Positions 39,012-63,193 of a stretch of 64,000 nucleotides of DNA are shown in pieces. Position 1 is the first letter of the stretch; every line of letters starts with the position of its first letter. The notes under the pieces were generated by a model that saw only the letters and a program-made list of their open reading frames with translations, did no database searches and was not told the DNA's origin. Both the position numbers and the translations under genes were made by a program. The stretch comes from Macrostomum lignano (Eukaryota): assembly GCA_002269645.1 (NCBI GenBank), contig NIVC01003562.1, positions 27,137 to 91,136 of the forward strand. Reading direction: 5' to 3'.

Positions 39012-39388
39012 ATGTCAGCGATTAGTTGCAGGTGTCAGCGATTAGTTACAGGTGTCAGCAATTTGTTGCAGGTGTCAGCGATTTGTTGCAGGTGTCAGCG
39101 ATTTGTTGCAGGTGTCAGCGATTTGTTACAGGTGTCAGCGATTAGTTGCATTTGTCAGCAATTAGTTAAAGGTGTCAGCGATTATTTGCATTTGTCAGCG
39201 ATTAGTTGCAGGTGTCAGCGATTAGTTACAGGTGTCAGCGATTAGTTGCAGGTGTCAGCGATTTGTTGCAGGTGTCAGCGATTAGTTAGCTCGTACAGGT
39301 GTCAGCGATTAGTTGCATTTGTCAGCAATTAGTTAAAGGTGTCAGCGATTATTTGCATTTGTCAGCGATTATTTGCAGGTGTCAGCAA
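39012..39388. repeat. Minisatellite, 20-bp unit (GCAGGTGTCAGCGATTAGTT), abutting and overlapping the stop codon of PAN-GRD gene A
   Basis: About 18 copies. Confidence 0.9.
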
Positions 39389-42168
39389 TTCGTTGCAGCC
39401 ACACAAAGCCGCTGTTGCTGCCCGTGTTACCGCCTGTGGTGGCCACACAGCTGCTGCCACCGCAGAAGGAGCCGCCGCCGCCTCCGCCGTGCTCTTTGAG
39501 AGTTCCGGCTCCGCCTCCGCTGTAGCCTCCGCCGGCTCCTGCAGAGCCTTTGTCAGAGCCTGGCGCAGCGCCGCCACCGCCTCCGCCGCCAAAGCCGCCA
39601 TGGGCTGGGCTGCCAACCCCGGCGAGGCCGCCGACCCAGCCTTCGGCCCGACCGCCGCCTCCGTCTCCGGACTCATTGTCTCGTCGCACGCCTGTAGGTC
39701 TGCCCAGCCAGCCGGCTCCGCAACCGCCGGGATTTCTATTGTGGTCTGCGGTGCTCTGGTCGCTGCTGCCTGGCTGTCCGTTGGCGCCTCCGATGCCAGT
39801 TTTTGTTGCCTGCAGTTGTTAGTAAGTTTCTCTTCTAAAAGTCTCCTCGATACCTATTAGCAGCACGAATTAAAAGAACATTCTACCACTTAAAATGCAC
39901 CCCGATTGAAACAAAAAAATAGTTGCTTTGACTCACATCAAAACTACCAATTGAGTTCGTGCCGTTCATGCCTGCCTGACCGTCGGCACCTAAAAATGCA
40001 GATGAAACTGCTTTTACTGAATGAAATGCAGATGAGACTGCTGCTCTCCAAAAAAGATCTCTTTACTCCCCATGCAGGTACTGATTTTGAAAACCGCTAG
40101 AACTAAATTTGGATCTATAATTCTTTGGCAGTGCTACTGTAATACGCTCTTAGTTAAATAGTTAAACCGGCTTTGAAGGTCTCAAGTAATCTAATTCATA
40201 ACTTGCATTAATACCCCAATATACTCTACCATTTCTCAAAAGCTAGCTCTGAAAATGCCAAAGATTTAGTAACACAGTCGGGTAACTGCAATCAGCAAAC
40301 CGTTATTATTTTGTGAAGCTCCTCCACCACCGCCAGCGGCCATTAGCAGCGAATTGTCCGATGTCCGGTACACGAAGCTGCCTCCTCCGCCTCCGCCACC
40401 GCTATCGTCCTTTTGGGCCGGACCTCCGGCCTGACCGACAACGATGGCCAGCTGAGTGCCTGCTGTCAGGCTGACATTGCCAGCCACCAGGGCTCCCCTG
40501 CCGCCATATTTGGCACTACCAGCTAGGGTGTTGTTGCCACCGTGAGCTCCGGCGAGTTCGATTCGGTAGCAGCCGGTAACGTCAATCAATGTGTAATGAA
40601 TGGAACCAAACCGGCCCACCGTAGCGTCTGGAATTATATTTTCGGTTTAGTTGGAAGTGAAATAAGCTGAAATCAAACTACATTAATCAGGAACTCGAGA
40701 ACTTTTTGTTTCTAGAACTTTTAACGACAATTCTGACTGCCAGCCTTTTGTATATAGCAAGAATTCAACAGTTTCACTATGAACTCTGATCTTTGTTTCG
40801 ACTGTTTCAAGACTATTGAGATACCGTACCAATTTAACATTATTCTGTCATTCATTTGTCAGCTGTCATTTTATTACTTGGCGGTGATCGCATACATGTA
40901 TTAATCAAATAAACTATACGATATTTATAAACTGCAGAGTGGTATAACGGACCGGAAAACTGCCAATTATTCCATATTCAAGAAGTTTGCTTGCATGATT
41001 AAGATTACGAGCGTAAATGTAGAATTAGAAATCTTATAGACGTGGGTCCGGTCCACGACGTTTGACTATAGCTACCAGTAGTTTGACTGCCGAGTATTTG
41101 TAGACCACTAGAAATTGAATTCTGACTCTAACCCTAACCCTAATCTAAATTCTAACCTATCAACCCATCGCAGTCAAACTGCCTCTAAATTCGCATTCAG
41201 ATACACAGTGTGACGGTGTCAAATTCTGTCAGATACTTTATGGATTATTACGAGCGTAACATTGACGTTTGTGATTTTTTAATGTAATCTTTATAAATTA
41301 ACCTGATCTGTTCATCTATTCAATATAATCAATACTTAAGTTTGTTTTAATTGTATCTCAAAAAGCGAATTATTTTGAAGCGTAATTATTGTGTCGATTT
41401 TTAAACACAGTCTTCCTTCGCTGGCGCTAGCATTGTCTGGTGACCAATCAGTGGCAATCACACACTAGCTACGGTCTCTACTGCGAAAACTCAATCTATT
41501 ACATGATAGACTAAAGACCCTTTATGATATTATGCGTTTAACTACTACAGAAGCCTGTCCCTTTCGATTGTTATAGAACGGCTGTCAATTAGTAATAAAC
41601 AAATAAATTATACACTCTCAGCTAAAAGCATACTTTACGACTACACTACTGTTCACTTCGTCACACATAGTTCTTGTACTGAAGTCTCTCTTACTTTGAA
41701 ACTCGAGGGTGACATTGGAAACCGGAGCCAGCTTGATCAGATCTTCAAAGTTCTCCAACCTCATCACAATTGCATCAGGCTCCGTCCCCATGAGTCTCCA
41801 CTCGTTGGTCCCAGCTGGAACTCCTGGCTGCTGAGACACTGTCACTAGCAGACAGAGACCGCTGCTCTTTCTAAATACGGCGGCAGAGCAACGCATATGT
41901 CCGCACCGCATGGTGCATTCTTCAGCTGACGTCACTCCACTGACGTTTAACACATGGCTGGTGATAGTCGAGTTTATTTCCAGAGCACCATTGTACTGGA
42001 TGTAGCGAGTTCGGTTGCAGTTGCCTACAAATTAAAAGCCATTTTTGTTTTAAACAACACGAAATGATAAGACACTAATACTGAATAAGTTTTACCTTCC
42101 ACAGAGACAATGCAGCACAGAGTCATAATGGTAGCAGCCGTCAGACTTTGAATACTTCCAGAGCACAT
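39369..42168 (-). CDS. Secreted PAN/apple plus ALK/LTK-type glycine-rich domain protein, paralogue A (exons 42096-42168, 41695-42024, 40301-40627, 39937-39989, 39369-39809; about 407 aa)
   Basis: Signal-like MCSGSIQSLTAATIMTLCCIVSVEG; PAN cysteines EECTMRCGHMRCSAAVFRKSSGLC; glycine-rich motifs GCYRIELAGAHGG, LAIVVGQAGG, GGGGGGSFVY, LLMAAGGGGGA, GAGW, GGFGGGGGG, GGGYSGG, GGGGGSFC. Intron phases 1,1,1,0. Confidence 0.88.
41472..41505 (+). ncRNA. Spliced-leader-like sequence (degenerate SL RNA gene or SL relic)
   Basis: CGGTCTCTACTGCGAAAACTCAATCTATTACATG matches at 31 of 35 positions the Macrostomum lignano SL as I recall it (CGGTCTCTTACTGCGAAGACTCAATTTATTGCATG) and ends in ATG like flatworm SLs. 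The GT donor is missing (ATAGAC follows). Confidence 0.6.
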
Positions 42169-43238
42169 TGCGGATTATATTCTTGCTACGAGCCGCAGTG
42201 AGGGAGCAAAAGTTTTTGCAACTAGCCTTCTCTGCCTAATTATGAGCGCTATTTCCAGGAAATTATTGGCTTGTCGAGATAAAAAGCAACTTGAAGAAAA
42301 AGAGGAGTAACAAGTCTGCTTCAGTTGTTCGGCAACACAGCACATGCACAAGGAAGCGGTAGCATAGATTCGACTCAATACTTCCGCCTTTAAAAGCTAC
42401 TAAAAATTGGGACTCAAAATGAAGACAACCTCTGTTAATTTTCTTTTCACTGTTGTGTTGTAGGCTGCAAGTTGCTAATTGCCTCACTTAACAGTTGGAT
42501 AGCTCCAGTAAAAAGTGCTTTAAATGATGGGCTAACCATTAAAATCCCTCCTGCTGTCATCCTTGTGAGATGTAGTGTTTGCGCTAAAAAGGAACCCAGT
42601 GAATAGCCAATACGCTCGTAAGCTAGATGTAGTAAATTATGCATTAGCTCTGTTGTTTAAGTGCAGACCCGGTAAACACGTTAAACTCAGGGGAGAGAAT
42701 TTAATGCGTTGGGAATTCCATGTGCCACAATATGCTTATGCTCATTTCCCCACCAAAAAACGTATGGTAGAAAGACCTATTACAAAAAAAATTGGCGAAG
42801 TGCTGTCAAATGAAACCCGAAGTTCGACACCCCGACCAAATGGACTGCAGTAGAAAACTTGCCAGACCGGTCGACTGTACGCGACAGCCCATATTGCGGT
42901 TCATCTCTTGGTATTAATGTGATTTAATAGGGATTAGTTTTAATTTAAGGCTCTAAGACAGAACCTGTGGTGACTTGGCTGGGTTGATTTTTGTTAGGGA
43001 TGTTAGCTTGTACTTTATTCAGTGTTTGGGGGTGGTGTTTTTACCTGTTTCGCTCTGTGCGGCTTTCTACAATATCTTGATGTACTCTCTTACTCATGTA
43101 CGTTCTTCAATCTGGCTACTTTTGTTCTCCAACCTTATCCACTAAATGTATCGTGCTCAATACTTACAATATAAATCGCAGTCGCTTGCCTCGTATCAAG
43201 CTTATATCGTTCTACAATCTAAAGTGAAGTCTTTACAC

Positions 43239-46200
43239 TGGCGACGAGCCATGAGCTTGTTGGGCTCAGTTGAACCCTTTGAAGAGGGGAGTGAAAAATG
43301 GCAGCAGTATCAAGCCAGATTGGAGCAGTTCTTCGAGGCGAACGACATCAGACCTTAAAGCAGCGTGCGGTTCTTCTGAGCGTCTGCGGCAGGAAGACCT
43401 ACCAGCTGATCGCCAGCCTGCTGTCTCCGCAAGAGCCGGCCAAGTCTGACTACGCTACGATCTGCGAAAAGTTAAAAGATCATTTTGATCCTGCACCGCC
43501 CGAGATTGTGCTCCGTTTCCGGTTTTACAGCCGCGGCCGTCAGCCTGGCGAAACCATCGCCGATTTTCTCGCCGAGCTGCGCAGATTGGCGCAGGATTGC
43601 AACTTCGGTGACAGCCTGAGTGCCATGCTCAGAGACCGCCTCGTGCTCGGCATTAATGATGACACCATCCAGCGGAGACTGCTGTCAGAGAAAAATTTGA
43701 CGCTTGACACCGCGTTGACTCTGGCACAGGCTCAGGCCTTGGCTGCTGAAGGCAACTCGCTTGTGGCGAAATCCGCTAGCCATGAGGCCTTCCAGATCGC
43801 CAGACAGACGGCGCTAGCGAAGCGCTGTTTCAGATGCCTCTCCCAGAGACATGTGGCAAGCAAGTGTCCCTTTCTGGAAAATAAGTGTTTCAACTGCTCG
43901 AAGGTGGGCCACACAGCTGCGGCCTGCAAGTCGCCAGCAGCTGCCAATCGTCGCACAGACCAGGCCGTTAGAGAGGTGGAGGTGGACCAAGAGGAGGCGC
44001 ACACGCTGCATGTGATGGCTGAGCCGAGGACCAAGATTCCCCCGATTGAGACGACTGTCATCATCGAGGAGACGCCTGTTCGAATGGAGATTGACACTGG
44101 TGCATCCGTCTCGCTCATCTCATCGGATACTTTTCGCTCTGAGCTCCGTGGGCTGCCCAAGCTGGAGCAGGGCAACGCACAGCTACGTACGTATTCAGGG
44201 GAGCCGATTCCTCTACTCGGCAAAATCAACGTCTGCGTGCGTATCGGAGAGATCTCCAAGGAGCTCCCGCTACTCGTCGTCAAGGGCTCCGGATCGAATC
44301 TGATCGGCCGGGACTGGCTGGCCGGCTTGCCGCTTGACTGGAGAAGCATCAACCAGGTGCAAAAAGACGGTGAGAACCCCAGAATCCGAGCCTTGCTGGA
44401 AAAGTATGCAGCTATTTTTGAGCCCGGATTGGGTCAGTACAACGGTCCACCTGTGCAACTGCATTTGAAGCCTGATGCCCGGCCTCGCTTATTCAAAGCT
44501 CGCAACGTTCCGTTTGCGCTCAAGGCTAAGGTGGAGGCTCAACTCGAAAAGGAGATTGAACAGGGCGTGCTCAAGCCAGTCAGCAGCTCAGATTATGCAT
44601 CGCCGATTGTTCCCGTTCTGAAATCAGACGGCACCGTGCGCATCTGTGCCGACTTTAAGCAGACCGTCAACCTCGCCGTGGAGCCGGACAAGTACCCCTT
44701 GCCGCGAATCGAGGAACTTTTTGCAAAGCTGGCAGGCGGGAAAAAGTTCACTAAGCTCGACTTGTCGCAGGCTTACTCCCAGATGCCGCTCGATGAAGCT
44801 GCCCAGCAGATCTGCACTATAAACACTTCCAAAGGCCTGCTTCGCTATACCCGCCTCCCGTTTGGTGTCGCTCCAGCCGTTGGAATTTTCCAGCGCCACA
44901 TGGACAGCCTGCTGCAGACCATTCCCCATGTGGCCTGCTTCATCGATGACCTGATTATCACCGGGGTTGACTACGAGAGCCATTTGCAATCGCTGGAACA
45001 GGTGCTGCAACGGCTGCACCAAAGTGGACTGCGCTGCGGCCTGAGCAAGTGTAACTTCATGCAGAACAGCGTCTGCTATCTGGGTCATCGGATCAATGCC
45101 GCTGGCCTGCATCCCCTGCAAGACAAAGTGCGTGCCATCGTGGACGCTCCGGCACCGCAGGACGTGACCCAGCTACGCAGCTTCCTCGGAATGGTCAACT
45201 ATTACAGCAAGTTCCTGCCGAACCTGTCAGCCGAGTTGGCCCCGCTGCACCGCTTGCTAAACCAAGGCGCCAACTGCTGCTGGGGCGCTTCGCAGGATGC
45301 CGCCTTTAAGAAGTGCAAGGCGCTGCTCGCCAAAGCGCCGGTCCTCGCGCATTTCGACGACACAAAGCCGTTGGTGCTGGAGTGCGATGCCTCTCCGTAC
45401 GGCATCGGCGCCGTCATCAGTCATCGGGTTGACGGTTGCGATCGATCGCTTTCGCTTCGCGTTCCCTGAACGATGCCGAGGCGAAGTACTCGCAGCTGGA
45501 CAAAGAAGCTCTGGCGATCGTTTTCGGGGTAAAAAGATTTCACTCCTACCTTTACGGCCGGAAATTCACCCTCGTCAGCGACCACAAGCGTTGCTAGGAC
45601 TCCTGCATGAGTCTAAGCCGATTCCCGCCATGGCGTCCGGAAGGATTCAGAGGTGGGCGCTCATCCTGGCGGGCTACAGCTACTCGATGGAACACCGATC
45701 TGGCAAATCACTACTGCGTGCAGACGCACTGAGCCGACTGCCACTGCCTGAAAGACCGACGAAGGCCCCGACACCTGCGGACGTTGTCCTGGTCATGGAC
45801 ATGCTGGGCGAAGGGCCAGTGACCGCCGGCGACATTCGAGCCTGGACCCGAACTGACCCGATCCTGTCAAAGGCACTGCGCTTCACGGAGGTCGGCAACT
45901 GGCCTGAGCGGACCGTGCCGGAGTTGCAGCCGTACAGATCCAGGGCCGACCAACTGAGTACTCAAGACGGCTGCCTTCTCTGAGCAACTCGAGTCATCGT
46001 TCCAGAGGCAGGCCGGACAGCCCTTCTCCATTGTTTGCACCAAGGACACCAGGGCGCATCTAGAATGAAGGCGCTGGCCCGCAGCTTCTTCTGGTGGCCA
46101 AAGCTGGACGAGGCAATTGAGCAGCTCGCCGGCGCTTGTTCGGACTGCCAGGAGCTGCAGAAGTCACCGGGGCCTGCGCCGCTGCATCCCTGGGCCTGGC

Positions 46201-46494
46201 CTGACAGGCCGTGGTCGCGCCTTCATCTGGATTTCGCGGGTCCGATCGAAGGGAAAATGCTGCTGGTGATTGTCGACGCCCATTCCAAGTGGATGGAGGT
46301 ACATGTATTGGCGCCAGACACTTCCACGGCAACCATCCAGCGGCAGCGGCAGAGCTTCGCTACACATGGGCTGCTGGACATCGTCGTGACGGACAATGGG
46401 CGCAACCTGGTCAGCGATGAAATAGAAGATTTTCTGCAGCGGAACGGCATCCAGCACGTACGAACTGCCCCGTACCACCCGGCGTCAAAGAACC
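43239..46494 (+). mobile_element. Decayed, 3'-truncated Ty3/Gypsy (Mag-like) retrotransposon: gag-PR-RT-RH-IN with frameshifts
   Basis: PBS TGGCGACGAG at 43239 after an LTR-like end TTACA; gag MSLLGSVEPFEEGSEKW; two CCHC knuckles; PR IDTGAS; RT ASPIVPVLKSDG, FIDDLIITG; RH LECDASPYGIG; IN HQGHQG...CSDC, LHLDFAGP, TDNG. Ends at PYHPAS. Breaks near 43355, 45450, 45590 and a stop at 45983. The 5' LTR start (about 42920-43000) and a 3' LTR were not found. Confidence 0.92.
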
Positions 46495-49084
46495 CAAAGT
46501 AGAATCTCAATATCAAAAGCACAATAGTTGCATGTCGGCAAGTTGACTACAAGGACTACTAGGAACAATTCGCTATAGTAGTCTAGTAGTAGTGTAGAGA
46601 TCTCCAAACATGGTAGCCTACTAGAAGTAGTAAGATAAAATTATGAACACAAATTTAAAGATAGCTATGCGTCATAATCTATTTTTAGTAATACCAGTAA
46701 TATCACGCAAACAGCGAGTGGCTATGCTATTGTCTGAAAACCGGTTCTCAACATCTATTTTTAGAACTTCCAAATATAGTAAATGTTAACCTGAATGTGA
46801 CCCATGTCTCACCCTTTTCTATTCAAAACACCCCACCTGTCAAATAATAAAATTCCTTTCGTAAAATCATCAAAAAACCGGTTTTGAGCTCAAGGTCGAC
46901 TCAAGGCCGACAAATTGTGTATAAATACAAACGCAAAATCCGAGCTGAAATCTCAGACTCGGAGCAGCCTCCAAAGATCTTGGGCTTTGCAAGAGGAGCC
47001 AAACGAGGCTATATCTTTAAGGAAGAGATAAACACCAATTGGTAAGCTTTGTTCGAGTCTTCGATATTTTGATTATTGAAAGCGATTTTATTGCCGGCCG
47101 TTACTGTCCAGTTGATTTTATCGAGTCTATTGAGTTTGAGGCCTCCCTTTTCCTAAGGGATTGGATAGGATCTGCTGACCGATTCCGATACCCCTAGATG
47201 ATTATTGAGTGATTGATTTTGTTGCCCTAGAGTAACCGATAGGAGCAGACGACTCAGATTCCGTTATTTCTAGAAGAAGACGCCCTTTCTGGAGGACCTC
47301 GTCAATGTTAAAGAATTGATTTTTGTTATTAGGGCGCATCGCTGCTTCTGCACTCGAGGAATTATATTGATTTCGGCACTCGAGGATTTATATTGACTTC
47401 TGCACTCGAGGAATACCTCGACGTCGACAGATTGAATTGTTACGCTCTCACATTCGGCCGATTTTGGAATTCAAGAAGACTACTCCAGAGGAAGAAGCCG
47501 TAAAGAAACGAGCTCGGAGAACCTGCCCGACAAAGAAGAGGAGCCCGCACCGGTAAGTGATCACTGAATTTTGTTCCCAGGCTTAACATCTGGAAGTGGG
47601 AGTTTTCGGGTGACTGATCACCACCCGATCAAACTCTTCACTTGGTTGACTACCGAAAATGTATAGCTTAGATTTCCCTTCTCGCGACGCCATTGTTATG
47701 GACTTAAAATTGTCACTACTAGTCAGTGCTTCGAGATAATGTTTTGTCTATGGTAAAAACTATCGAAACTTAGATTTTTCTTTGATAGTCTGTGGCAATA
47801 GCGTCAATTCTGGATAATGTAAATAAGTGCCACAGACACAGATTATCCACAGATTATCCATAAGTGCCATAAGACACGGACATTATCCATGACTTAACTA
47901 TAGATAAATGTCCGTGACTTGCGGGTAATGTCCTGTCATTCCTCGATTCAAATTTCATTCAAATTTCAAATTTCACACACAGTAACAAAAGGTGACGAGA
48001 AACAATAGGAATACATTAAAAAGTCAAACTTCAAAAGGACCACTCAATATGCTTGATATGAGTTCGTGTCAGAAGAACATGATTGTTCACAGACTGCCGT
48101 GGTTGAACGTACAGTTTTGCATGACGAGATGTTCTTGCCATTTGGATGAGCGTTTCCGAAGTTAACCGCCTCTTGGACCGTTGAGCTCTGAATGTTGACT
48201 GCCCCCAAGTCTTCTTCTTCTTTACCGTCTTCACTTTCACCCGGAAGCAACGGCAGGTCGTCACTTGTTCACCCCTTTTCGATGAACTTGATAAACATGC
48301 CTAGGTCTTCGCCAGCTGCGAAGTCTTTACTCGATCTTAATAGCATCGCGAAAAATCCATTTTGGAGCGTGAGACACCAGAAAGACAACAAATCGGCAAA
48401 TTAGTCCAGTTAATCATATGGACAATGCCAAGAATTCTACATGTACATGACTTAATTTCTGAATGTACATTATTTTGAGAATCGGTGTTGTCAGCGCTTA
48501 TTTTAGCGCCCGAAGGCACTCATTTTAGTATTGATTGATGTATGTATTGATTTCCATAACGGGTCTGTTTGTATGTATTGATTTTCATAACGGGTCACCA
48601 GTTGGAGTTGGGGGCAAAGCATTATCATGTCCCCCATAGCTAACTTTATGAGGGGACATATCCTGATGTCCCTCGGTGGGGACGCCCGCCCCCTCCATCT
48701 CTGGACCTTCTTCGCCAATAGTCTATGGTCAAAAAGTTTCATGTGCTCGTTTTCAGAGAAACAACCTATGGCACTGCAACTTCAACCGAAGATTTTGTCT
48801 ATGGTACTTCCGAGCGAAAATGAAGCTAGAGAAGGTAAGATCTCAGCAGGATAATGATTGGGGGCGTGCTAAGTTCAGCAACGCAGGATAAATCAACTCA
48901 GGATAACCCAACCATTATCCTGAGATCTGACCTTCGTCTAACCACCCATTGTTGCCATAACTTATATGTTTGTTGATTTTAGATTGGCAACTTGAGATGG
49001 CATTTGCATAGCGAGTCTGAAAGTGCTGAGGTCTTTTAGTGACTTTGGTTGGGATCGTTAGGATCATATATATAAGTTTGTTGA

Positions 49085-49790
49085 ACTATTGAACCATGCG
49101 CTTTTTTCTGAGCGTTCCCAATCTCTCAATTGTCGAGGGCGCCCAGCGACAACTGGACAAGCTAGTTGCTGTTGCGGCGAGTGTCGGCCTGGCGTCAACA
49201 TGCAGAAACCGTCGTGTTTCCGCGCTGGTCTGGTTCCCGGCGTCCGCGAGGATTTGCGGCATCGCCGCGGACTTGCCTGGGCTGCCTTTCGTCTGTGAGG
49301 GCAGTCCTGCAGTCCGAGGCCTTACCTGACCGCCAGAAGGCGGCGTTTTTCCTGCCGATATTGAGATCGTCCTGCTGTACAACGCCAAGACTTGGACGCT
49401 GACGGAGTCGCCCGAGCAACAAGTTGACGCGGCGCACGCTGGCCTGCTGCGCGCCGCCTTCAAAATCGGTCACGAGCGAGTGGCCGAGTAACCAACGCGG
49501 CTTTGTATCGCCGCGCCGGCCTGGTCCGTCCAAGCGACCTGTTGCGCCGTCGGCGACTCCAGCTAGCACGCCACATCATCTGCACCGAGTTGTACCGCCC
49601 ACAGCCGGTGCAGGAGGTGCTGCTGCTAACCCTGCAGGCACCTTACCGGCGGCGGGGGCAGGCGCGCACTCGGCGTTTCGTCGACTGCCTGCTGGCTGAT
49701 GCCGGCGCCCCGGATTCGGCCGGCGGCGTTGCATTCGTTCGCGACCTGGCCTTGAGGTGCACCCTGTGACGCTGAACGCGTATTCTGTTG
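49085..49790 (+). mobile_element. 5'-truncated, frameshifted non-LTR retrotransposon (RTE-like RT C-terminus)
   Basis: AQRQLDKLVAVAASVGL; LLYNAKTWTLT; LYRRAGLVRPSDLLRRRRLQLARHI; RGQARTRRFVDCLLADAG. Confidence 0.75.
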
Positions 49791-51226
49791 TTGTGTTCTC
49801 AATCGATTTGTCTAACAAGTTATCGATTCCAACCGCTTCACTAAATTCAGGTATGTTTTTGCTTAGAGCAAAATTGAGCAAAAGGAATAAAATATTTACA
49901 TTACAAGATTTTTTTCACCAGTTGAGCTAGTGGATTTTTTCAAAGGAAAAATATGGCTACTGTAAAGATGCATTTCTACTAATAGTAGTAATTTAAGCAA
50001 ATTTAGTGAAATAATTCAGTTTGAATATCAATCAGAGACTACTTGAACTTAGTTTCATAAGATATCAATAGAGTTATATAAGAGAGGCACATCATATCAA
50101 AAGGACAGGTGAACATTGGGTCTGCATCCTATCCAAAGCAATAATTTTGTTATCCTTCAAAGCTTCAAAATATTTCCATAGATTTCGAGACGTGTCTTTC
50201 TACTTTAGTAGTCCTTGCGTTGAATAATTTTGGATGACACACGTTTTCTGTTTAATTAGACAATCGCTTTCACAAAATTTTGTAAGATATTTATTATTTT
50301 CATTTTTAACGCTATTCTCTTTCGCTATTAACTGTTTCCTACTCTGAAATAAGTTTAGGAGTTGAGAAAGGCGACCCTTGAAACTCTCAAGAGCCTTGCA
50401 ACGTATGCAGATCCAGCTGTAGCCATTCAGTCAACAAAGTGAAATTGCTGCTTTGATAGCAATCAAGCCATGTATGGCACTTGCAGCTTCCCAGACCAAC
50501 TGTATGTACTAGCTAGTAGACTCTGTTTTTATTAGAGTCAAGTGAACTTGTACCCGATTGAGCTTGAACTATTGCTGACAAGAGAAATGTTGCCACGGTC
50601 AAAAAAAGTTTCTGAACAATCAATGCTCCGTGCTGAAAAATAATGCAATAGAATTGTTATATCCTGCTTGAATGATTTTCCTGTGAACCCATTTTCTAGC
50701 GATACACACTGCCTGCATAGGACCGTGACTGTATAATACAGACTTTGCGGACGGATATTACACTCGAAATCAGCATTCAAGTGAACACGCAAGCAATTCA
50801 CTAATACGTGGGCTAACATAATGTGAAAGTACCACTTTGCATGCGAACAATTAAAACTATTGTTCACTATTATAGTTCTGATGCCATATTAGCTCTTTTA
50901 AGTTCGTTTTCTATTGCTCAAAACCGTTCAGAACAAGTGCACACAGAAGTATTGTCATAAAAACATCCGTAGTACCTCCAAAAACCAAGGATACATTTTT
51001 GCGGAGAACTCTTTGTCTTAAAGATGATCTTAAAAATCTTAAAAATTTGACTTTAGACGAGAATTAAACATTGCACGAATACGGTATGCTGTAAAGAAGT
51101 AGTCTAAATATTTCTAAAAATTCTTAAGATTTTTGTTCCTATTAAACGAACGTCACACAGACTACCTTTTGCTTCAAATTATTTTAGTTCAGTAGCTACT
51201 CTTTTAGACAACAGGCCTCCTTGGTC

Positions 51227-54200
51227 TCAAGGACACGAGCCAAGATTCGCCAGACTCAGCAGCACAGAGCCGTGCTTGCTGGCCGTGTTGCCGCCAGCAC
51301 TGCCGGTGCAGCCGCTGCCGCCGCAAAATGAGCCACCGCCGCCTCCGCAATGGTTGCCGTAGATACCGGCTCCGCCGCCGCTGTAACCGCCGCCAGCTCC
51401 GGCTGCGCCAACGAAAGAGCTGGAGGCCGTACCAGCACCTCCTCCACCGCCGAAGCCGCCGCAGGCGATGCTGCTGCCACCGGCGCTGCCTCCGACCCAG
51501 CTGTCGTTTTTACCACCGCCTCGATCGCCGTCGTAGCTGTTGTACCTGCGGTGTAATAATGCTCATATAGTCACTTGACGAAAGGATTTCAGTGTTGCAC
51601 TGTCTCAAAAAATGAACTTTCCGACAGTAAATGAAGCATATTTGTATTAGTATTTTGTCTTCCAAGGTTGATTTACAAGTTTATAGGACATATTTTTCGA
51701 AAGATAACAGCATATGCAGTTCCTTTCTTTTCTTCTTCCTTTCTGTATTGGGGATTTCTAGTTTCAGAGCTAAAAGTAAAAACCATATTTTTATGCGATT
51801 TTAGATGAGCTTTTCACTGCAACAAATCTGCTTTCTGTGATATTGGCACGATTTCCAGACGTAGAATGTACTGCACAGTATTTGCGCACGTGCTTTAAGA
51901 TCCTAGATACGCCAATATAGGCCAGTATACTCATGCTTACCTGGGGTTCACAGGTTTCCCCAGCCAGCCGGCACCGCAGCCGCCATGGTTCATGCCAGAG
52001 GAAGTTGTTTTAGCACTTGGATTATTGCTTCCGGGTTGACCGTTTACGCCTCCGATTCCGAAAAGATGGCTCTGGTGATTTGATATAAAGTTAACTGATA
52101 CCAGCAAACGTAAAGAAAACTATTTGCAATGAGGCTCATCTCGCCAAATCATATAGTAAATCGTAAAATGCGGTATTTGTTGATATGCATGTAAATTTAA
52201 AAAATGGAGCCACACAGTCGTCTCACAGCCAGCAAAAAGTACTTGTGCACATTTGCTGACCTCTAAACATGTCGTCGCACAGTGTTTCTACTGTGGATGT
52301 TGTAGGAACCTGCGTGAGTCCACCCCAGTGCCCAAACCCAAAATTGTTGTGGTCGTGCCCGAAAAAATAATAACAAACGACTTTATCGCTCCGCTATCCA
52401 CCGTCTCTGCTACGCTACGCTTGTACAACCGAATTGACACAGGCACATGGATTATGCATTCCGCTCGATGATTATTTCCACATAACATTCTATTTCATAT
52501 TTCAACACATTTCCATAAAAATTAAGTGGCTTGAATTACACCATATTTCATAATTGCAGCAAAATACGGCTTGATGGCTCCTCCATGCAAACTTTCCGTT
52601 CTCAAAGGTCTTCAGAAGGTAGAAATATACGAGCTACAATCGATTCAAGATAGAAACTACTACCGTTTTTTTATTTCGATAGGCCCTACCAGTTGCTGAA
52701 GATGAACTTTTCAAAAAAATTTAATGTGTTTACGCATTTGTATGTATGCATCAGTAAAAAGGCAGGCTCAATATTGGTTGAGCGCTGGTACGCTAGGATA
52801 CCGCAATTTTGTCTTAGGCTCGGTACCTCATGAATGACACAAGATGGCCAGGATGAATTCCTGACTTGTTGCTTGAAAGCATACTTCTAAGCAAATAGAT
52901 TCTCTGTTTCACAACTCAAAACCCATGCAAATACGAGTAGAGCTCAATAATTGAAGAGGCTTTTCTTACTGATAGCTCAGGTGTGTGAAACTTACCTCAC
53001 CTTCACCTAGGGAACCTGATCCGTTCACGCCTGCCTCGCCAAGCCTTCCTAAAGAGATAATTTGCACACAAAGCTTAGGCATTCAAAATGCGAATTTCAA
53101 AAGTAAGACTGAACACTACCATTTGAACTCACCATCGTATGCGAAGGACGCGCCGCCACCACCGCCGGCAGCCATCAAGAGTTGATTGTTGAATGCGTCG
53201 TACGCGAAGCTGCCTCCACCGCCGCCGCCACTGTTTGAAGACGAGTCTGCCGGACCGCCAGCCTGACCGACAACGATAGATAGCTGTGTTCCCGCTGTCA
53301 GGTTAACATTGCCAACGACCAGGGCTCCCCTGCCGCCGAACTTGCTGCTACTAACCAGGGTGTTGTCGCCTCCTTTTGCTCCGCTGATTTCGATGCGATA
53401 GCAGCCGGTAAAGTTTATAACTACTTGTTGGATGACACCGAACCGACCGGTGCTCGAGTCTGGAATCAGGCAAAACAGTTGAGCATTGTTGAGTTTTGCT
53501 GAACCGTAGAATCATGAGCAATTAAAACAGAAGGATGTCAAACTTTAAAACTGGTTTTGAAGCAAAAATTTCACGGATTCCTAGTTTCGAATCATTCTAC
53601 TTCTGTTGTCTCTGCATGAAATTGTGAAAAACAATGAAACACTTGCTTGAAAAAACGCGAGTGAAATTGATTTTGGCTGTTGACTTGATTATATCTTCAA
53701 AATCCGGTAGTTTCCACGCGACTGTGTCAGTCTCAGCTCCCAGGAATCTCTGCTCGTTAGTTCCAGTCGCCGATCCTGACTCCCCAGACACGGTCGCCAG
53801 CTGGCAGAGACTGGTGCCCTTCCAGAACGCGCCAGCAGAGCAGCTCATCAGTCCGCATCGCATGACGCATTCCTGCACTGTCGTGACTCCGGTGACGTTC
53901 AACACTTGGCTGGAGACTGTCCCGTTGATGACTAGGACACCAGAGTGCTTGACGTAGCGAGTTGAATTACGACAAGAGCCTAAACGTTTGTAAATGAAAG
54001 CTTCATACATGTAAACCTGACGTCGCCAAGGACTACTTAAGTAAAAGGACAGAAAAGTTTTGAGAGGCAGGTTTTACTGTTAAATACGCTCGTACATAAC
54101 TGAGAATATATATAAGCTTTAAAAGATGAAAAATGGATCAAGTCGACTTATTGGTTTTATGAATCTATCAAGGACAACTTTGACGGGAAATGACGGGAAT

Positions 54201-54678
54201 TAATAACTTAGATGGGCCTCCAAATATTGTCGTTTCCCGTCACCGAGTATTGAGTAGTCTCTAGAATCTATTTTATCATTCTGTTGAACATTTTTATTTC
54301 ATAGTCAGCCAAGATCTCTTATTTTCTAACCTTAAAGGTTTATGATTATCAATTTCTGCTATAAGAAAAAGCAATACATATAACGATGAAGATCATGGGT
54401 CTGCCTCCGATCAGAGTCAGTAGCAATTTTTGTTCTGAAAAAAAACGAAAACCGTTCTTTGTAATGTTTTTTTCGGTAAAACATGCCCCTTAAAATTTTT
54501 CAACTAGCGTATTTTACCGTCTTTCTAATTGAAAAATCCTTGGACGTTATATGCACAAAACAAAACAAAATAGTAACGAAATAAAACAAAATAAAACGGA
54601 TCTCTCACCCTCCATCGAGCCGATGCAGGAGCAAACGAAAGCGCAAAATATGATAAATCTAATGTGCGTTATCTTCAT
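51227..54678 (-). CDS. Secreted PAN/apple plus glycine-rich domain protein, paralogue B (exons 54609-54678, 53647-53979, 53133-53459, 52996-53048, 51941-52071, 51227-51545; about 410 aa)
   Basis: Signal-like MKITHIRFIIFCAFVCSCIGSMEG; PAN ECVMRCGLMSCSAGAFWKGTSLC; same glycine-rich motifs as A and C; one GC-AG intron and one extra intron. Confidence 0.86.
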
Positions 54679-56729: not shown

Positions 56730-56808
56730 GCTGGGTCTTTTAATGCTTGAATTGAAAGAGGCATTGTATATCCACCTTTGCTATGTCCTAATACCTTGTT
56801 TTACGTTT

Positions 56809-57064
56809 GGGGTTGTAGCCTAGTGGTTGGAGCGTCGGACTCACGACTGAAAGTTTTCAGCCTGCTCTTAACAATTTGTGTCTTTAAGCAAGAAACTTAA
56901 CTCTGCATTGCTTCAGTTCACCCAGCTGTAAAATGGGTGCCCCAGTCCTTGGACTGAACAGCCGTACGCAGCATTCAGATGCGCTGCGCAGTAGCTGCGG
57001 CTGAGCTGTCGGTTGCACATCTGGCCCAATTGGGGCAGGTGTAATCAGTTATATTATTATTATT
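56809..57064 (+). mobile_element. tRNA-derived CORE-like SINE, copy 2 (B box lost)
   Basis: Colinear with 29275-29580, including the 3' domain CCCAGTCCTTGGACTGAACAGCCGTACGCAG...GCAGGTGTAAT and a (TAT)n tail. Confidence 0.8.
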
Positions 57065-59652: not shown

Positions 59653-62600
59653 ATGCGTCAGTCGAAGACATTGCTACTCTTTGCCATCGGTTTCTGCTGC
59701 GTCATGGTCTCCGAAGGTGTGTGATGAAGTTGATTTTTTGCTCTAAAATAGTTTATCAGCAAAATATATCCAGGTTTTCGTGGCAAAGAAGTACTTTGAA
59801 TAAATAAGAACTGCTATGGCGAGGCAAGTCTTCCAGATCCGGCTTGCTTTTTTAATTTGTAGCGAGACGATATCTAAGAAGGCGATGATTAAAGATAAAC
59901 GATACTTCATTTGCTTTTGCCTTTTGAAATTATTCTTCTCAGGGCGTCTAATAACTAGAAATCCTATAGGCCTCTTGAATCCCATCTTTGCGTCTCGGGG
60001 TTGCCTAAGTTTATACTTGAAACTGTTTTACCAATGGTCAGGTGATATGCAGAATACGACTTTGCCCCCCCCCCACTCCATGTTGCAATGTAGGCGCTTG
60101 CAACCGAACTCGCTATGTGCAACACAACGGCGTCCTTGTTGTCAACTCGACCATCAGTAGCCAAGTCCTGAATGCCTCCGGAGTGACTTCAGTTGAAGCA
60201 TGCGCCATGCTGTGCGGAATGAAATCCTGCTCTGCCGCCGTGTTCTGGAAGAGCAGCGATCTGTGCCAGCTGGTGACGGTGTCTCGCGAGCCGGGATTTG
60301 CTGGAAACAACGAATGGAGACTACTGGGCTCGGAGACTGCTGAGGCGGTGGTGATGAAGCTGGAAAACTTCGAAGAACTGATGAAGCCTCGTATTATAAA
60401 TGTCACTCGAGTGTTTACAAGTGAGAGTTCAGCCGCATGTAAATTTGCATAGAGTATCGCACACTTGGTGCACTTTTTCCGTCTTCTTTAAGTCGGCTCG
60501 AGCTGGCCACAAGTTCCTAATTTGCGCTATCCCATGTTCGTTTTAAATTCAATCCATATGAGCATATTTGAGTCAGCAATAACTAATTGAAACATGCATG
60601 GATTTCAGACAATGGAACGGGTCGAATCGGCTCTGTCCAGCTGGTGACCATCGACATTGCCGGCTGCTACCGGATCCAACTCGCTGGTGCCAAGGGCGGC
60701 GACAACACGTATGTCAGTCCTGACGAACTCGGCGGCAGGGGAGCTCTGGCTGCTGGAAACGTCAGTTTGTCAGTCGGAGTTCAGCTGTCGATTGTTGTCG
60801 GCCAGGCCGGAGGTCCGTCGCAGAGCAGCGGCTACTCTAGCGGCGGCGGCGGCGGAGGCAGCTTCGTGTACCGGACATCGAACAATGAGCTGCTGATGGC
60901 CGCTGGCGGCGGCGGCGGCGCCTCGTATGGGTATTCCGGTAAGCATGCGATTTTTATTGTATCTTAACTGAGACGTTTGATAGTTGCTTTTGCCATATTG
61001 TCGTATGCAGCTATTCAATAATGTATTTGTGAAAAGTTTCAAGAAACTGAAGCCGGTAAACAGTTTAGGGAAATGGCGACTTAAGTATCTTTTATCAAGT
61101 ATATTTTTAAGTAGTCCTTGAACCAGGGACGAAACTACACTGAAGAATGCCTCAGTCTACTGGCGCATTTCTATTGTAAAATTGTGAAATCTTCATGGAT
61201 CTACAGGCCAGAGTTCATTGATGGTGCAGGCTGCCAGAAATATTGCAGAATTTTTTCTGCTTCACAACACTTTAGCCGAGACAGTCTTCAATTGACGACG
61301 ATCGCATGCTAAAATTCTTATGAAAGCAAAAGTTGGCACTTATATATACATTCGGAAAAGTAGAGTGAGCAGTATATGCTCGTAACAACTTTGAAAAAAA
61401 CAATTTAAAGTTAAAAAGTTTTTGTTGTTGCAAAACTTTAAGGTACGCTCGTACTCAGCAACATGGTTAAATTTCCAGCCCGAAAACAGTTGTCAACTAT
61501 TCTCGGATCTCAGTCTTAAGTGACGCAATTCACAACACACCTGCGGTTCTCGTCTCAAAGCTGTGGGTGATACAGCTTAGGCTGGTGAGGGGACAGTGGA
61601 GAGTTGTGGCTTGAGCTGCATTACAGCTGCCACTTGTTAACCTCTGGTTTCGTGAAAACGTTAACATGATATCTGCGTATTTAAGGTTGGTTCAGCTATA
61701 GAAATTTCTGAGCCTTACCTTCTCCTGCAGTAGATTGGGTGAATGAGCGATCCCTGCAATGAATGAACTGACTGTAAATGAATTTCAGGTCGACCCGGAG
61801 AGGCGGGCACAGGAGGCTCAAACTCGTTCGGGACTGATGATGTAAGTTCTACAGATTGTTCGATTCGAATTAATTGTTTGCTGCAATTCAATACAGTTGA
61901 CATCTCAGCAATGGCAAGTAATTAGCTAAATAAAGCAGATTGGACACTGCAACAGCGCTTCTTTGAATTTCACTTTAGTCGATTTTTGCTGCAATATAGA
62001 GCTATGTAGATACTTTTACATCTTTTCAACAAAACAATTTGACAATTACCTTCCGAAATTCACAATTGCAAATGAAGCCTGCATAAGTATGCGATGTGTT
62101 TTCCCGGATTTTCATTTACACTGTAAATGCTTGTCCAGCTATTTTTTAGAAATGCTATGGAATACGTAAGTTATTCGAATCGCATTAGTGTATTGTGAAG
62201 ACTTCTTTCTCAGACGGTTCTGTTTTGACAGCACGGTTGTATGTCGCAGTCCCAGCTGGTGCAGCTGTTTATTTTTATACATACGTACATAGAAACTTTT
62301 CAGGTTGAGTTATTTAGAGATTTCCGATTTTAATTGAAGTAGCTACACCTGTACATGCTTCTTAGTCTGCGCCGGCACAGATAAAAGGCTTTCGTTCCTT
62401 TTCAATCTGGAGCCGTCTAGTAGAGTAGGTGTAGTGCTGCTACCAGTCCCTTCGGGTCTCAGCCTTCACATGACAAGGGGAAAGCGGCCCACCAATGAAG
62501 CCGCTAATGACCGCTAGACAAGAGAACAAGACACCCAGGCACTAGTGCATCCACTAGTGCCGCTGCACAAAGAGCAAACCAAGAGCTGCAGGCTGAGCCA

Positions 62601-63193
62601 AGCTGCCCAGCGGCTGCAAATAAGAGCACAAGGGAAACTGCTGACGAGTGAGACACCAAACAGTAATCCTAATGGCTCACTGCATAATCTTAGCGTCATT
62701 CCGCTTCAGTTCTACAGAAAGCAAATGGTTTCAAAAACATACTCGACATCGCTTGCAGGCAGCCCAAACTGGCATCGGAGGCGTTAACGGACAGCCGGGC
62801 AGCAACGACCAAAGCACTGCGGCTACCGATAGAAACCCTGGAGGCTGCGGAGCCGGCTGGCTTGGCAAGCCTACCGCCGCCCGCACAAGCACCGAATACG
62901 GAGACAGAGGCGGCAGTCGCGCCGACGGCTGGGTCGGCGGCAGAGCCGGAGACACGAGTCCCGCCGACGGCGGCTTCGGCGGTGGCGGAGGCGGAGGCGC
63001 GGCCACCACCAAAGGAGCGGCAGGAGCCGGCGGAGGCTACAGCGGCGGCGGAGCTGGGGCTCGCAGCGACCACGCCGGAGGAGGCGGCGGCTCCTTCTGC
63101 GGCGGCAACGGCTGCGTGGCCACAACGAGTGGCAACACGGGCAGCGAGCACGGCTTCGTGCTGCTGCAAATGATCGGCAGCGGCTGCGCTTAG
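59653..63193 (+). CDS. Secreted PAN/apple plus glycine-rich domain protein, paralogue C (exons 59653-59716, 60094-60420, 60609-60938, 61789-61841, 62759-63193; about 402 aa)
   Basis: Signal-like MRQSKTLLLFAIGFCCVMVSEG; PAN EACAMLCGMKSCSAAVFWKSSDLC; glycine-rich domain FTNNGTGRIGS...GCYRIQLAGAKGG...VVGQAGG...GGFGGGGGGG...GGGGGSFC. Phases 1,1,1,0 as in A. Confidence 0.9.

What the first reader, a model, noticed from the sequence alone, without database searches (positions are those of the whole stretch)
39369..63193. Cluster of secreted PAN/apple plus ALK/LTK-type glycine-rich proteins with no membrane anchor or kinase
Seen: three intact paralogues of about 400-410 aa with the same exon plan (signal, PAN, glycine-rich domain) and stops right after the last glycine-rich motif; B and C are divergently oriented; sequences are well diverged yet keep all Cys and Gly-run motifs. 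Established: in ALK/LTK receptors this domain is a TNF-like sandwich plus a polyglycine-II helix bundle that forms the ligand-binding and dimerisation region; related Gly-rich folds occur in phage adhesins. PAN domains mediate protein or glycan binding. Inference: a soluble ALK-ectodomain-like family that could act as ligand traps, lectin-like innate immune effectors or mucus/adhesive components. I know of no functional description of this architecture, and it is the best candidate for a novel system in this window.
Basis: partly seen in the sequence, partly recalled or inferred. Interest (0 to 1): 0.75.

Follow-up and report, generated by a model that had tools for sequence, protein, structure and literature searches.

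The report
Secreted PAN plus ALK-type glycine-rich proteins
Three neighbouring flatworm-type genes encode secreted proteins that join a PAN/apple binding module to the unusual glycine-rich fold known from the ALK receptor and phage tail-fibre tips. They belong to a widespread family of free-standing proteins for which I found no functional study, and they are not cut-down ALK receptors.

Summary
Three intact paralogues lie exactly where stated: A on the minus strand (42168-39369, 407 aa), B on the minus strand (54678-51227, 413 aa) and C on the plus strand (59653-63193, 402 aa). Each has a signal-peptide exon, a PAN/apple exon and a complete TNF-like plus glycine-rich (TG/GRD, Pfam PF12810) domain, and stops right after the last motif. 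They are 54-65% identical and under purifying selection (dN/dS about 0.3). None has a transmembrane segment, and no frame of the window holds a kinase motif.

A 75-sequence family profile hits only ALK, LTK and SCD-2 ectodomains among PDB sequences. An AlphaFold model of the closest full-length relative (Macrostomum lignano) matches only ALK/LTK TG structures in the PDB.

The "soluble ALK ectodomain / ligand trap" reading is not supported. The proteins are much closer to free-standing GRD proteins of cnidarians, which already show PAN-(EGF)-GRD architectures, and to bacterial and phage GRD proteins.

My best reading is a secreted, glycosylated recognition or adhesion protein with two binding modules. 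This function is inferred, not shown. These are new members of a known domain family for which I found no functional study. Interest is moderate.

The parts
42096..42168 (-). Gene A exon 1: start codon and signal peptide (MCSGSIQSLTAATIMTLCCIVSVE-G), phase-1 GT donor
   Evidence: Upstream scan for ATG + hydrophobic stretch + phase-1 donor. It ends in the same x-E-G motif as B and C. Model.
41695..42024 (-). Gene A exon 2: PAN/apple domain
   Evidence: Pfam PAN_1 25.5 bits against a cutoff of 21.4. The domain profile hits only PAN/apple structures.
40301..40627 (-). Gene A exon 3: TNF-like part and first glycine runs of the GRD
39937..39989 (-). Gene A exon 4: 53-nt micro-exon (ADGQAGMNGTNSIGSFD)
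   Evidence: Found by comparison with homologues; AG/GT sites and phases fit.
39369..39809 (-). Gene A exon 5: remaining glycine runs, C-terminal strands, conserved last Cys, stop TAA
   Evidence: The last 9 codons and the stop lie inside a 20-bp minisatellite.
54609..54678 (-). Gene B exon 1: signal peptide (MKITHIRFIIFCAFVCSCIGSME-G)
53647..53979 (-). Gene B exon 2: PAN/apple domain; GC donor
   Evidence: PAN_1 scores 19-21 bits, just under the cutoff. Profile evidence.
53120..53459 (-). Gene B exon 3: TNF-like part and first glycine runs
52996..53044 (-). Gene B exon 4: 49-nt micro-exon (LGEAGVNGSGSLGEGE), junction phase shifted relative to A and C
51941..52071 (-). Gene B exon 5: GIGGVNGQPGSN...GGCGAGWLGKP segment
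51227..51545 (-). Gene B exon 6: last glycine runs, C-terminal Cys, stop
59653..59716 (+). Gene C exon 1: signal peptide (MRQSKTLLLFAIGFCCVMVSE-G)
60094..60420 (+). Gene C exon 2: PAN/apple domain
60609..60938 (+). Gene C exon 3: TNF-like part and first glycine runs
   Evidence: Pfam ALK_LTK_GRD 30.4-32.9 bits against a cutoff of 24.5.
61789..61841 (+). Gene C exon 4: 53-nt micro-exon (RPGEAGTGGSNSFGTDD)
62759..63193 (+). Gene C exon 5: remaining glycine runs, C-terminal Cys, stop
43298..46502 (+). Not part of the family: degraded Ty3/gypsy-type pol (protease, RT, RNase H, integrase) lying between genes A and B
   Evidence: Pfam RVT_1, RT_RNaseH_2, gag-asp_proteas, rve and Integrase_H2C2. The reading frame is split over three ORFs. 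No LTR pair was found in 42200-51200.

Best explanation
SHOWN: the cluster holds three intact paralogous genes under purifying selection. Each encodes a protein of about 37 kDa after signal cleavage, with 6-9 N-glycosylation sequons. Each protein has one PAN/apple domain followed directly by one complete TG module (a TNF-like beta-sandwich plus a polyglycine-II glycine-rich bundle, Pfam PF12810). None has a transmembrane segment, EGF domain or kinase.

The three genes belong to an animal subfamily of free-standing extracellular GRD proteins. That subfamily is abundant in the flatworm Macrostomum and in cnidarians, where PAN-GRD and PAN-EGF-GRD forms occur. It is nested in a large GRD superfamily that also includes bacterial surface proteins, phage and giant-virus fibre or virion proteins, and the ALK/LTK ectodomain.

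INFERRED: these are soluble or matrix- or mucus-associated recognition or adhesion proteins with two binding modules. PAN/apple would supply glycan or protein binding, as it does in micronemal adhesins, HGF and factor XI. The rigid glycine lattice would present the more variable inter-run loops as a second binding surface, as described for phage fibre tips (Pam3 gp24, S16 gp38) and for ligand capture by ALK. A Cys conserved at the start of the PAN exon and a Cys conserved one or two residues from the C-terminus could staple the two modules together or link subunits. Tandem duplication has produced diverged binding variants. They are not truncated ALK receptors or decoys derived from ALK.
For: - Gene structure and integrity.
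- Three copies only.
- Selection: dN/dS 0.27-0.37 in both domains. Glycine-motif columns are 69% invariant against 30% for the other GRD columns, and pN/pS stays below 1 everywhere outside the signal peptide.
- Secretion: the only hydrophobic segment is N-terminal. There are 6-9 N-X-S/T sequons, several at matching positions in all three paralogues, and an even number of conserved Cys.
- GRD identity: Pfam PF12810 is above cutoff for C. The 75-sequence family profile hits only ALK, SCD-2 and LTK ectodomains in PDB sequences, E 5e-10 to 6e-5. The window trio against the family alignment gives hhalign probability 100%, E 2e-76 over 328 columns.
- Fold: the AF2 model of the closest full-length relative, P0004, has pLDDT above 90 over most of the GRD. 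A long stretch with no DSSP alpha or beta is confidently modelled, as expected for polyglycine-II. Foldseek's top 21 PDB hits are all ALK/LTK/SCD-2 TG domains, E 5e-11 to 3e-7, TM 0.45-0.59 normalised by target; the next hit has E 0.19.
- PAN identity: the N-terminal domain profile hits only FXI and kallikrein apple domains, the HGF N domain and MIC4-type proteins. Pfam PAN_1 is above cutoff for A.
- Family context: the best hits are Macrostomum lignano proteins, up to 64% identity. Coral, anemone and jellyfish proteins carry PAN + (EGF) + GRD.
- Family size: 4,059 cluster representatives at E <= 1e-3. These include proteins with EGF + C-type lectin + GRD, fn3 + GRD or DUF285 + GRD, and giants with up to 9 GRDs.
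- Phage relatives: 94 predicted viral proteins at E <= 1e-3, best 4.7e-16. One match has TM 0.66 and rmsd 2.9 A over 280 columns. The list includes cyanophage virion structural proteins.
[quoted passage not shown] It resembles C. elegans ALK and recognises the host through variable distal loops (PMC9608196).
Against: - There is no expression, localisation or binding data for any member, so the function is inference from domain content and analogy.
- The fold was predicted for a 45%-identical Macrostomum homologue, not for the window proteins. The predictor refuses spliced sequences.
- The PAN part of that model has low confidence (pLDDT 50-60).
- Pfam scores of A and B for PF12810, and of B and C for PAN_1, fall just below the curated cutoffs.
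- There is no sign of diversifying selection in the loops. That weakens an arms-race, immune-receptor version of the idea, although dS is near saturation.
- Exon 1 assignments and several splice junctions lack transcript support.
- Only 0.8 kb lies downstream of gene C in the window.
Confidence: 0.6

Rival explanations
1. Soluble decoy or ligand trap derived from the ALK ectodomain. The proteins would bind the flatworm's ALK ligand (Jeb/HEN-1/ALKAL-like) and modulate ALK signalling.
For: The GRD is the ligand-binding region of ALK/LTK (PMC10605310; 10.1101/2023.11.25.568672). The family profile and the homologue's fold match ALK/LTK TG domains.
Against: - A single window sequence and the window-only profile find no ALK in the PDB.
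- The same query finds cnidarian and bacterial free-standing GRD proteins at 1e-28 to 1e-20.
- The same architecture occurs in several cnidarian lineages. A published ALK/LTK evolutionary survey is framed within bilaterians (PMC7851593). I did not test whether cnidarians have ALK.
- Predicted phage GRD proteins match as well as or better than ALK.
- There is no EGF-like module after the GRD, unlike ALK/LTK.
- Conservation of ALK ligand-contact residues was not tested.
Confidence: 0.07
2. Structural glycine-rich material, for example a component of cuticle-like secretions, eggshell, stylet or glue. The glycine runs would give bulk mechanical properties rather than specific binding. Databases name relatives 'loricrin-like' or 'PE-PGRS'.
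For: Glycine makes up 29-31% of the C-terminal two thirds. Sources give names such as loricrin-like and PE-PGRS. Macrostomum has many paralogues.
Against: The glycine runs are short, fixed in number and position, and interleaved with conserved non-Gly residues and Cys across phyla. They are modelled with high confidence as a globular domain. This is a fold, not a low-complexity repeat. Size is constant at about 400 aa with no repeat expansion. The names are automatic and similarity-based.
Confidence: 0.15
3. Recent horizontal acquisition of a bacterial or phage GRD gene, with no conserved animal function.
For: The GRD is common in bacteria, phages and giant viruses. Among the listed top hits, the animal proteins named by a source are Macrostomum and cnidarians only.
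Against: Each gene has 4-5 spliceosomal introns, a separate signal exon and a metazoan-type PAN exon. The paralogues have diverged to dS of about 1 under purifying selection. The PAN...GRD arrangement is shared with cnidarians. An ancient transfer cannot be excluded.
Confidence: 0.08
4. Non-functional duplicates or a gene-prediction artefact produced by GC- and glycine-rich sequence.
For: The region is repeat-rich. The wrong-frame ORFs over the same exons are long. There is no transcript evidence.
Against: All three have open frames across 5-6 exons with canonical splice sites. dN/dS is about 0.3. Cys, sequons and motifs are conserved. Homology to proteins of other phyla is strong.
Confidence: 0.03

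Closest known systems
Free-standing PAN-(EGF)-GRD proteins of cnidarians and the Macrostomum lignano GRD family. I found no functional study of them; examples are Stylophora pistillata AWC38_SpisGene21703, Porites ABFA07_017308, and M. lignano A0A1I8HRN4 and A0A1I8GD17.
   Same: Signal peptide, N-terminal PAN/apple domain, C-terminal complete GRD ending a few residues after the last strand, and the same glycine-run and Cys pattern. Identity is 29-64%.
   Different: Coral members carry an extra Cys-containing linker of about 60 aa, or 1-4 EGF domains, between PAN and GRD, and their GRD is largely single-exon. Macrostomum paralogues also pair the GRD with other N-terminal regions. The window proteins are at most 64-72% identical to any listed protein, so they come from a different species or from unsampled paralogues.
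ALK/LTK/SCD-2 TG supradomain (TNF-like + glycine-rich domain; PDB 7NX0, 7NX1, 7MZY, 7LRZ, 7LIR)
   Same: Same fold class by family profile and by the predicted structure of a close homologue. It is an extracellular ligand-binding module built on a polyglycine-II lattice.
   Different: No EGF-like domain, TM helix, kinase or MAM/LDLa domains. Sequence similarity is too low for single-sequence detection. PAN is the N-terminal partner. Foldseek identity is 18-26%.
Phage receptor-binding fibre tips with TNF-like + glycine-rich domains (cyanophage Pam3 gp24; S16 gp38 for the glycine-rich part)
   Same: The TNF-like sandwich continues into a glycine-rich lattice, with conserved glycine stems and variable distal loops (PMC9608196). 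Predicted phage proteins are the best structural matches to the homologue model, with E down to 4.7e-16 and TM up to 0.66.
   Different: There is no N-terminal helical trimerisation or baseplate-docking domain and no chaperone gene nearby. The genes are eukaryotic, with introns. The solved Pam3 fibre itself matches only weakly (E 0.19). The oligomeric state is unknown.
PAN/apple-domain adhesins and binding proteins (factor XI and prekallikrein apple domains, HGF N domain, apicomplexan MIC4-type micronemal proteins)
   Same: The four-Cys core pattern, and profile similarity to these proteins only.
   Different: A single PAN domain is fused to a GRD. The outer disulfide pair is incomplete within the domain: an N-terminal Cys is present, and its possible partner is the conserved C-terminal Cys of the whole protein (inference).

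Membership tests
PF12810 ALK/LTK-type glycine-rich (TG) domain superfamily | Match to the Pfam model above the gathering score | tested here: inconclusive
   C scores 30.4-32.9 bits (cutoff 24.5). A scores 21.4-23.6. B scores 21.1 with the early model and is not listed with the final model. Close homologues score 28-38 bits.
PF12810 ALK/LTK-type glycine-rich (TG) domain superfamily | Profile-level sequence homology to solved ALK/LTK/SCD-2 GRDs | tested here: met
   The A1 profile (window trio + 72 homologues) hits only ALK, SCD-2 and LTK chains, E 4.8e-10 to 6e-5. The window trio against the family alignment gives hhalign probability 100%, E 2e-76. The window-only profile does not reach ALK.
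PF12810 ALK/LTK-type glycine-rich (TG) domain superfamily | TNF-like beta-sandwich fused to a polyglycine-II helix bundle | tested here: met
   Tested by proxy. The AF2 model of M. lignano homologue P0004 (45% identical) has GRD pLDDT mostly above 85-95. Foldseek's top 21 PDB hits are all ALK/LTK/SCD-2 TG domains. The window proteins themselves could not be folded.
PF12810 ALK/LTK-type glycine-rich (TG) domain superfamily | Several conserved glycine runs at fixed positions | tested here: met
   Seven to eight runs are conserved among A, B and C and across 75 family members.
ALK/LTK receptor tyrosine kinases | Transmembrane helix after the ectodomain | tested here: not met
   The only hydrophobic 19-residue window is the signal peptide. 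A stop codon follows 10-15 residues after the last strand in all three.
ALK/LTK receptor tyrosine kinases | Intracellular tyrosine kinase domain | tested here: not met
   No HRDxxxxN, DFG, GxGxxG-V or related motif occurs in any of the six frames of the 64-kb window. Family members from other species end at the same point. Caveat: only 0.8 kb lies downstream of C.
ALK/LTK receptor tyrosine kinases | EGF-like domain following the GRD; MAM/LDLa domains in ALK | tested here: not met
   Pfam finds only PAN_1 and ALK_LTK_GRD.
PAN/apple domain | Match to Pfam PAN_1 above the gathering score | tested here: inconclusive
   A scores 25.5 bits (cutoff 21.4). B scores 19.2-21.1 and C 20.2-20.3.
PAN/apple domain | Profile homology to solved PAN/apple domains and the conserved Cys core | tested here: met
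   The A3 profile hits only PAN/apple-containing proteins such as FXI (5.6e-6), kallikrein, the HGF N domain and MIC4-type proteins, apart from weak matches at E 0.018-0.55. Four Cys are invariant in 15 sequences.
Phage TNF-like + glycine-rich tail-fibre receptor-binding proteins | Fold similarity of the distal TNF-like + GRD part | tested here: met
   Tested by proxy. 94 BFVD predicted viral proteins match at E <= 1e-3, best 4.7e-16. One has TM 0.66 and rmsd 2.9 A. The solved Pam3 fibre matches at only E 0.19.
Phage TNF-like + glycine-rich tail-fibre receptor-binding proteins | N-terminal helical shaft or baseplate-docking domain, trimer, dedicated chaperone | tested here: not met
   The N-terminus is a signal peptide plus PAN. 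The genes have introns and no phage context. Oligomeric state is not testable here.

The most novel reading that the evidence does not exclude
The PAN-TG proteins would be survivors of the ancestral, free-standing animal form of the TG module. On this reading they are a pre-bilaterian secreted recognition protein that uses a phage-fibre-like polyglycine-II tip to bind microbial or glycan targets. The ALK/LTK ligand-binding domain would have been recruited later from this stock by fusion to a receptor kinase. In the flatworm, the tandemly diversified copies would act as soluble pattern-recognition or agglutinating effectors in mucus or epidermal secretions.
Probability: 0.2. Interest if true: 0.65.

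Novelty: new member of a known kind. Interest (0 to 1): 0.42.

Why it matters
The TG (TNF-like plus polyglycine-II) fold has been studied almost only in the oncogenic receptors ALK and LTK and in a few phage fibre tips. This cluster, with its cnidarian and Macrostomum relatives, shows that animals also carry many small, secreted, free-standing TG proteins, often led by a PAN/apple or lectin/EGF module. I found no functional study of them.

They offer three things:
- A tractable system for asking what the TG module binds when it is not part of a receptor. Macrostomum supports RNAi and in situ hybridisation.
- An outgroup for reconstructing how ALK acquired its ligand-binding domain.
- Compact natural polyglycine-II scaffolds of about 270 aa for structural and design work.

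It is not a new kind of system. The domain family and even this architecture are already in public databases.

Tried and rejected
1. My first gene models lacked the micro-exon and used wrong junctions between the third exon and the last. Homologue sequences showed a missing segment of about 17 aa, and I rebuilt the models.
I folded the closest full-length homologue, P0004, instead.
3. Single-sequence phmmer of C against PDB sequences gave no hits at E <= 0.01. The profile of A, B and C alone found only chance antibody light chains at E about 0.1. ALK is reached only with the deep family profile.
I replaced it with a motif scan for kinase signatures in all six frames, which found nothing.
5. 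M. lignano relatives are named 'Protein kinase domain-containing', 'receptor protein-tyrosine kinase', 'WSC', 'PPC' and 'F5/8 type C'. For those I scanned (P0003, P0008, P0010, P0014), Pfam finds none of these domains. The EF-hands on P0005 are followed by a frame-disturbed GRD, which looks like a fused gene model. I therefore did not use these names as evidence.
6. I looked for positive selection in the loops and found none. pN/pS is below 1 everywhere outside the signal peptide, and dS is near saturation.
7. An LTR search around the retroelement found no direct repeat of at least 80 bp in 42200-51200.
8. Ten literature searches found no paper that characterises secreted PAN+GRD proteins. The only mention of PF12810 was for a nematode-killing fungus, with 'no hint of a function'. 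The Nature 2021 ALK structure paper PMC8639797 is not held.
9. The roughly 300-aa 'ENA' hits looked bacterial by size. The one contig I inspected (4.8 Mb) is gene-sparse and has an animal-type HTH neighbour, so I treated these hits as probably cnidarian, not bacterial.

Full report
**What is there**

The window is eukaryotic. It is rich in minisatellites and holds retroelement fragments. In 39369-63193, six-frame translation shows three sets of exons that encode the same protein plan.

I built gene models by anchoring on conserved peptide segments and canonical splice sites. Homologues from the protein database have about 17 residues between the 'GGGGGAS...' and 'GIGGxNGQPG' segments that my first models lacked. 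The matching 49-53 nt micro-exon is present in all three genes, with AG/GT sites and fitting phases.

Final models:
- A, minus strand, 5 coding exons, 407 aa.
- B, minus strand, 6 coding exons, 413 aa. It has one GC-AG intron, an extra intron in what is the last exon of A and C, and a shifted exon 3/4 junction.
- C, plus strand, 5 coding exons, 402 aa.

Exon 1 was found in each gene as an ATG, a hydrophobic stretch and a phase-1 donor. In all three it ends in the same x-E-G motif, which joins the first Cys of the PAN exon.

tblastn finds no further copy in the window. A and B lie in tandem and are separated by a degraded gypsy-type pol. B and C are divergent, with start codons about 5 kb apart.

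**Are they real genes?**

Pairwise protein identity is 54-65%. Nei-Gojobori dN/dS is 0.27-0.37, with dS 0.8-1.2, and is similar in the PAN and GRD parts.

Ten Cys of the mature protein, seven to eight glycine runs and several N-glycosylation sequons occupy the same alignment columns in all three. The only hydrophobic segment is the N-terminal one, and there are 6-9 N-X-S/T sequons per protein. The products are therefore predicted to be secreted glycoproteins of about 37 kDa. There is no transcript evidence, so junction details remain predictions.

**Domain identity**

- Pfam gives ALK_LTK_GRD (PF12810) above the curated cutoff for C. A is just below it; B was just below it with the early model and is not listed with the final one. 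PAN_1 is above the cutoff for A and just below for B and C.
- For the GRD, a profile built from A, B, C and 72 homologues hits only ALK, C. elegans SCD-2 and LTK ectodomains among all PDB sequences, with E from 4.8e-10 to 6e-5.
- The window trio aligns to the homologue family with hhalign probability 100% and E 2e-76 over 328 columns.
- The structure predictor does not accept spliced window proteins. I therefore folded the closest full-length relative, M. lignano P0004, which is 45% identical, using the family alignment. Its GRD is modelled at pLDDT mostly 85-97. This includes about 140 residues with no DSSP helix or strand, as expected for polyglycine-II helices.
- Foldseek against the PDB returns 21 hits with E from 5e-11 to 3e-7. 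All are ALK/LTK/SCD-2 TG domains, with TM 0.45-0.59 normalised by target. The next hit is a cyanophage Pam3 fibre at E 0.19.
- For the N-terminal domain, a 15-sequence profile hits only PAN/apple proteins: factor XI and kallikrein apple domains, the HGF N domain and micronemal MIC4-type proteins. Four Cys are invariant. The PAN part of the model has low confidence.

**No anchor or kinase**

- All three genes stop 10-15 residues after the last predicted strand.
- Macrostomum and coral relatives end at the same place.
- No kinase catalytic motif exists in any of the six frames of the window.
- Relatives that sources name 'kinase' have no kinase domain by Pfam.
- Caveat: only 0.8 kb of sequence follows gene C.

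**Where the family sits**

- The best database hits are Macrostomum lignano proteins, with at most 64% identity in the hit table (up to 72% in the multiple alignment). The source is therefore probably a related flatworm rather than M. lignano itself.
- Next come many cnidarian proteins, from corals, anemones and jellyfish. Several are PAN + GRD or PAN + EGF(n) + GRD.
- The numerous unnamed 'ENA' proteins of about 300 aa have a coral-like consensus. The one contig I inspected looks animal.
- A myxobacterial protein is hit at 1.5e-20.
- An exhaustive profile search of 1.84 billion cluster representatives finds 4,059 proteins at E <= 1e-3 and 861 at E <= 1e-10. These include EGF + C-type lectin + GRD, fn3 + GRD and DUF285 + GRD proteins, and giants with up to nine GRDs.
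- Against predicted viral structures, the homologue model has 94 matches at E <= 1e-3. Among the best 50 listed are cyanophage virion structural proteins, Caulobacter phage proteins and giant-virus proteins. The best E is 4.7e-16, and one match has TM 0.66 and rmsd 2.9 A over 280 columns.
- By contrast, a single window protein, or the three together, does not detect ALK at all.

These proteins are therefore not recent derivatives of an ALK ectodomain. ALK is one distant branch of the same superfamily.

**How it most likely works**

What is shown is a secreted, two-module protein under purifying selection. What follows is inference.

PAN/apple modules are protein- or glycan-binding units in adhesins and plasma proteins; this rests on general knowledge of the proteins hit. 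The TG module is a binding device wherever it has been studied:
- In ALK/LTK it captures the activating cytokine.
- In the Pam3 tail fibre, a TNF-like domain continues into a glycine-rich lattice with conserved glycine stems. The authors propose that its variable distal loops recognise the host, and they note its similarity to C. elegans ALK (PMC9608196).

In A, B and C, the glycine-motif columns are 69% invariant and the remaining GRD columns 30%. That is the same conserved-stem, variable-loop pattern, though no window exceeds pN/pS of 1.

The partners of GRDs elsewhere are C-type lectin, EGF, fn3 and PAN domains. All are extracellular recognition or adhesion modules.

I therefore favour a soluble or matrix- or mucus-associated recognition or adhesion protein with two binding surfaces. 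A possible disulfide between the conserved first Cys and the penultimate-region Cys remains speculative.

Rivals, in order of my confidence:
- Structural glycine-rich material (0.15).
- Ancient or recent lateral transfer without a conserved role (0.08).
- An ALK-ligand decoy (0.07).
- Artefact or pseudogenes (0.03).

**Comparison with what is known, and novelty**

The domain family (PF12810), the fold (ALK/LTK structures, Pam3 gp24) and even the PAN + GRD architecture are already public; the last appears in annotated coral and Macrostomum entries. Ten literature searches found no functional study of the free-standing animal proteins. The only mention of PF12810 was 'no hint of a function' in a fungus.

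This is therefore a new set of members of a known domain family for which I found no functional study. It is not a new kind of system. Its value lies in pointing to an accessible animal model for the non-receptor role of the TG fold and for the origin of the ALK ligand-binding domain.

**Verdict**

- Observation: confirmed, with corrected exon plans.
- Interpretation: partly supported. The domains and secretion hold; the ALK-derived decoy reading does not.
- Novelty: new member of a known kind.
- Interest: 0.42.

Noticed in passing
window 39013-39398 (gene A 3' end at 39369-39398): A 20-bp minisatellite of about 19 copies starts inside the last 9 codons of gene A. The first unit encodes LQRIADT, and the junction with the second unit supplies the conserved C-terminal Cys, Lys and the TAA stop. 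Paralogue C has a similar CTGCAA...CTGC 3' end, so the array seems to have grown by slippage from the gene's own 3' terminus.
   Followed up: partly
window 43298-46502 (+): A Ty3/gypsy-type pol (aspartyl protease, RT, RNase H, integrase) is split over three overlapping ORFs, so it is frameshifted. It lies between genes A and B. No LTR-like direct repeat of at least 80 bp was found in 42200-51200.
   Followed up: partly
window 2500-31300: This stretch is extraordinarily dense in minisatellites, with more than 20 arrays. They include two 20-bp arrays of 128 and 148 copies (15677-18208 and 21008-23918) with strong GC and AT skew. These flank two 151-bp arrays whose consensus units appear to be reverse complements of each other (18604-19544 and 19858-20634). 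The arrays create long spurious ORFs.
   Followed up: no
window 5631-6215 (+) and 25527-27041 (-): An exon-like ORF carries a short-chain dehydrogenase/enoyl reductase domain (adh_short_C2, 3.7e-19). A 505-aa gag-like ORF carries a PNMA-type domain, probably another retroelement remnant.
   Followed up: partly
window 53645-53647 and 51545-51941 (gene B): Gene B differs from its paralogues. Its intron 2 has a GC donor (TCAA|GCAAGT) at the position where A and C have GT. It has an extra intron inside the last exon. Its exon 3/4 junction is in phase 2 instead of phase 1. This needs cDNA confirmation.
   Followed up: partly
related proteins P0124-P0129, P0140, P0212 (representative library): Very large proteins of 2,000-3,700 aa carry 5-9 tandem GRD modules. 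Others combine EGF repeats + C-type lectin + GRD, or bacterial DUF285 repeats + GRD. Their organisms are unknown because the library has no names.
   Followed up: partly
related proteins P0007-P0017 (Macrostomum lignano, UniProt): Rule-based names such as 'receptor protein-tyrosine kinase', 'PE-PGRS family protein' and 'Protein kinase domain-containing protein' are attached to short GRD-only fragments. Of these, P0008 and three differently named relatives (P0003, P0010, P0014) were rescanned and show no such domain; for the 'receptor protein-tyrosine kinase' entries (217-341 aa) the precomputed Pfam column lists only PF12810. The same mislabel appears on phage proteins in BFVD.
   Followed up: yes
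window 49100-49800: A GC-rich block has overlapping Ala/Arg/Pro-rich ORFs on both strands, downstream of gene B. Its nature was not determined; it may be a repeat or a transposon fragment.
   Followed up: no
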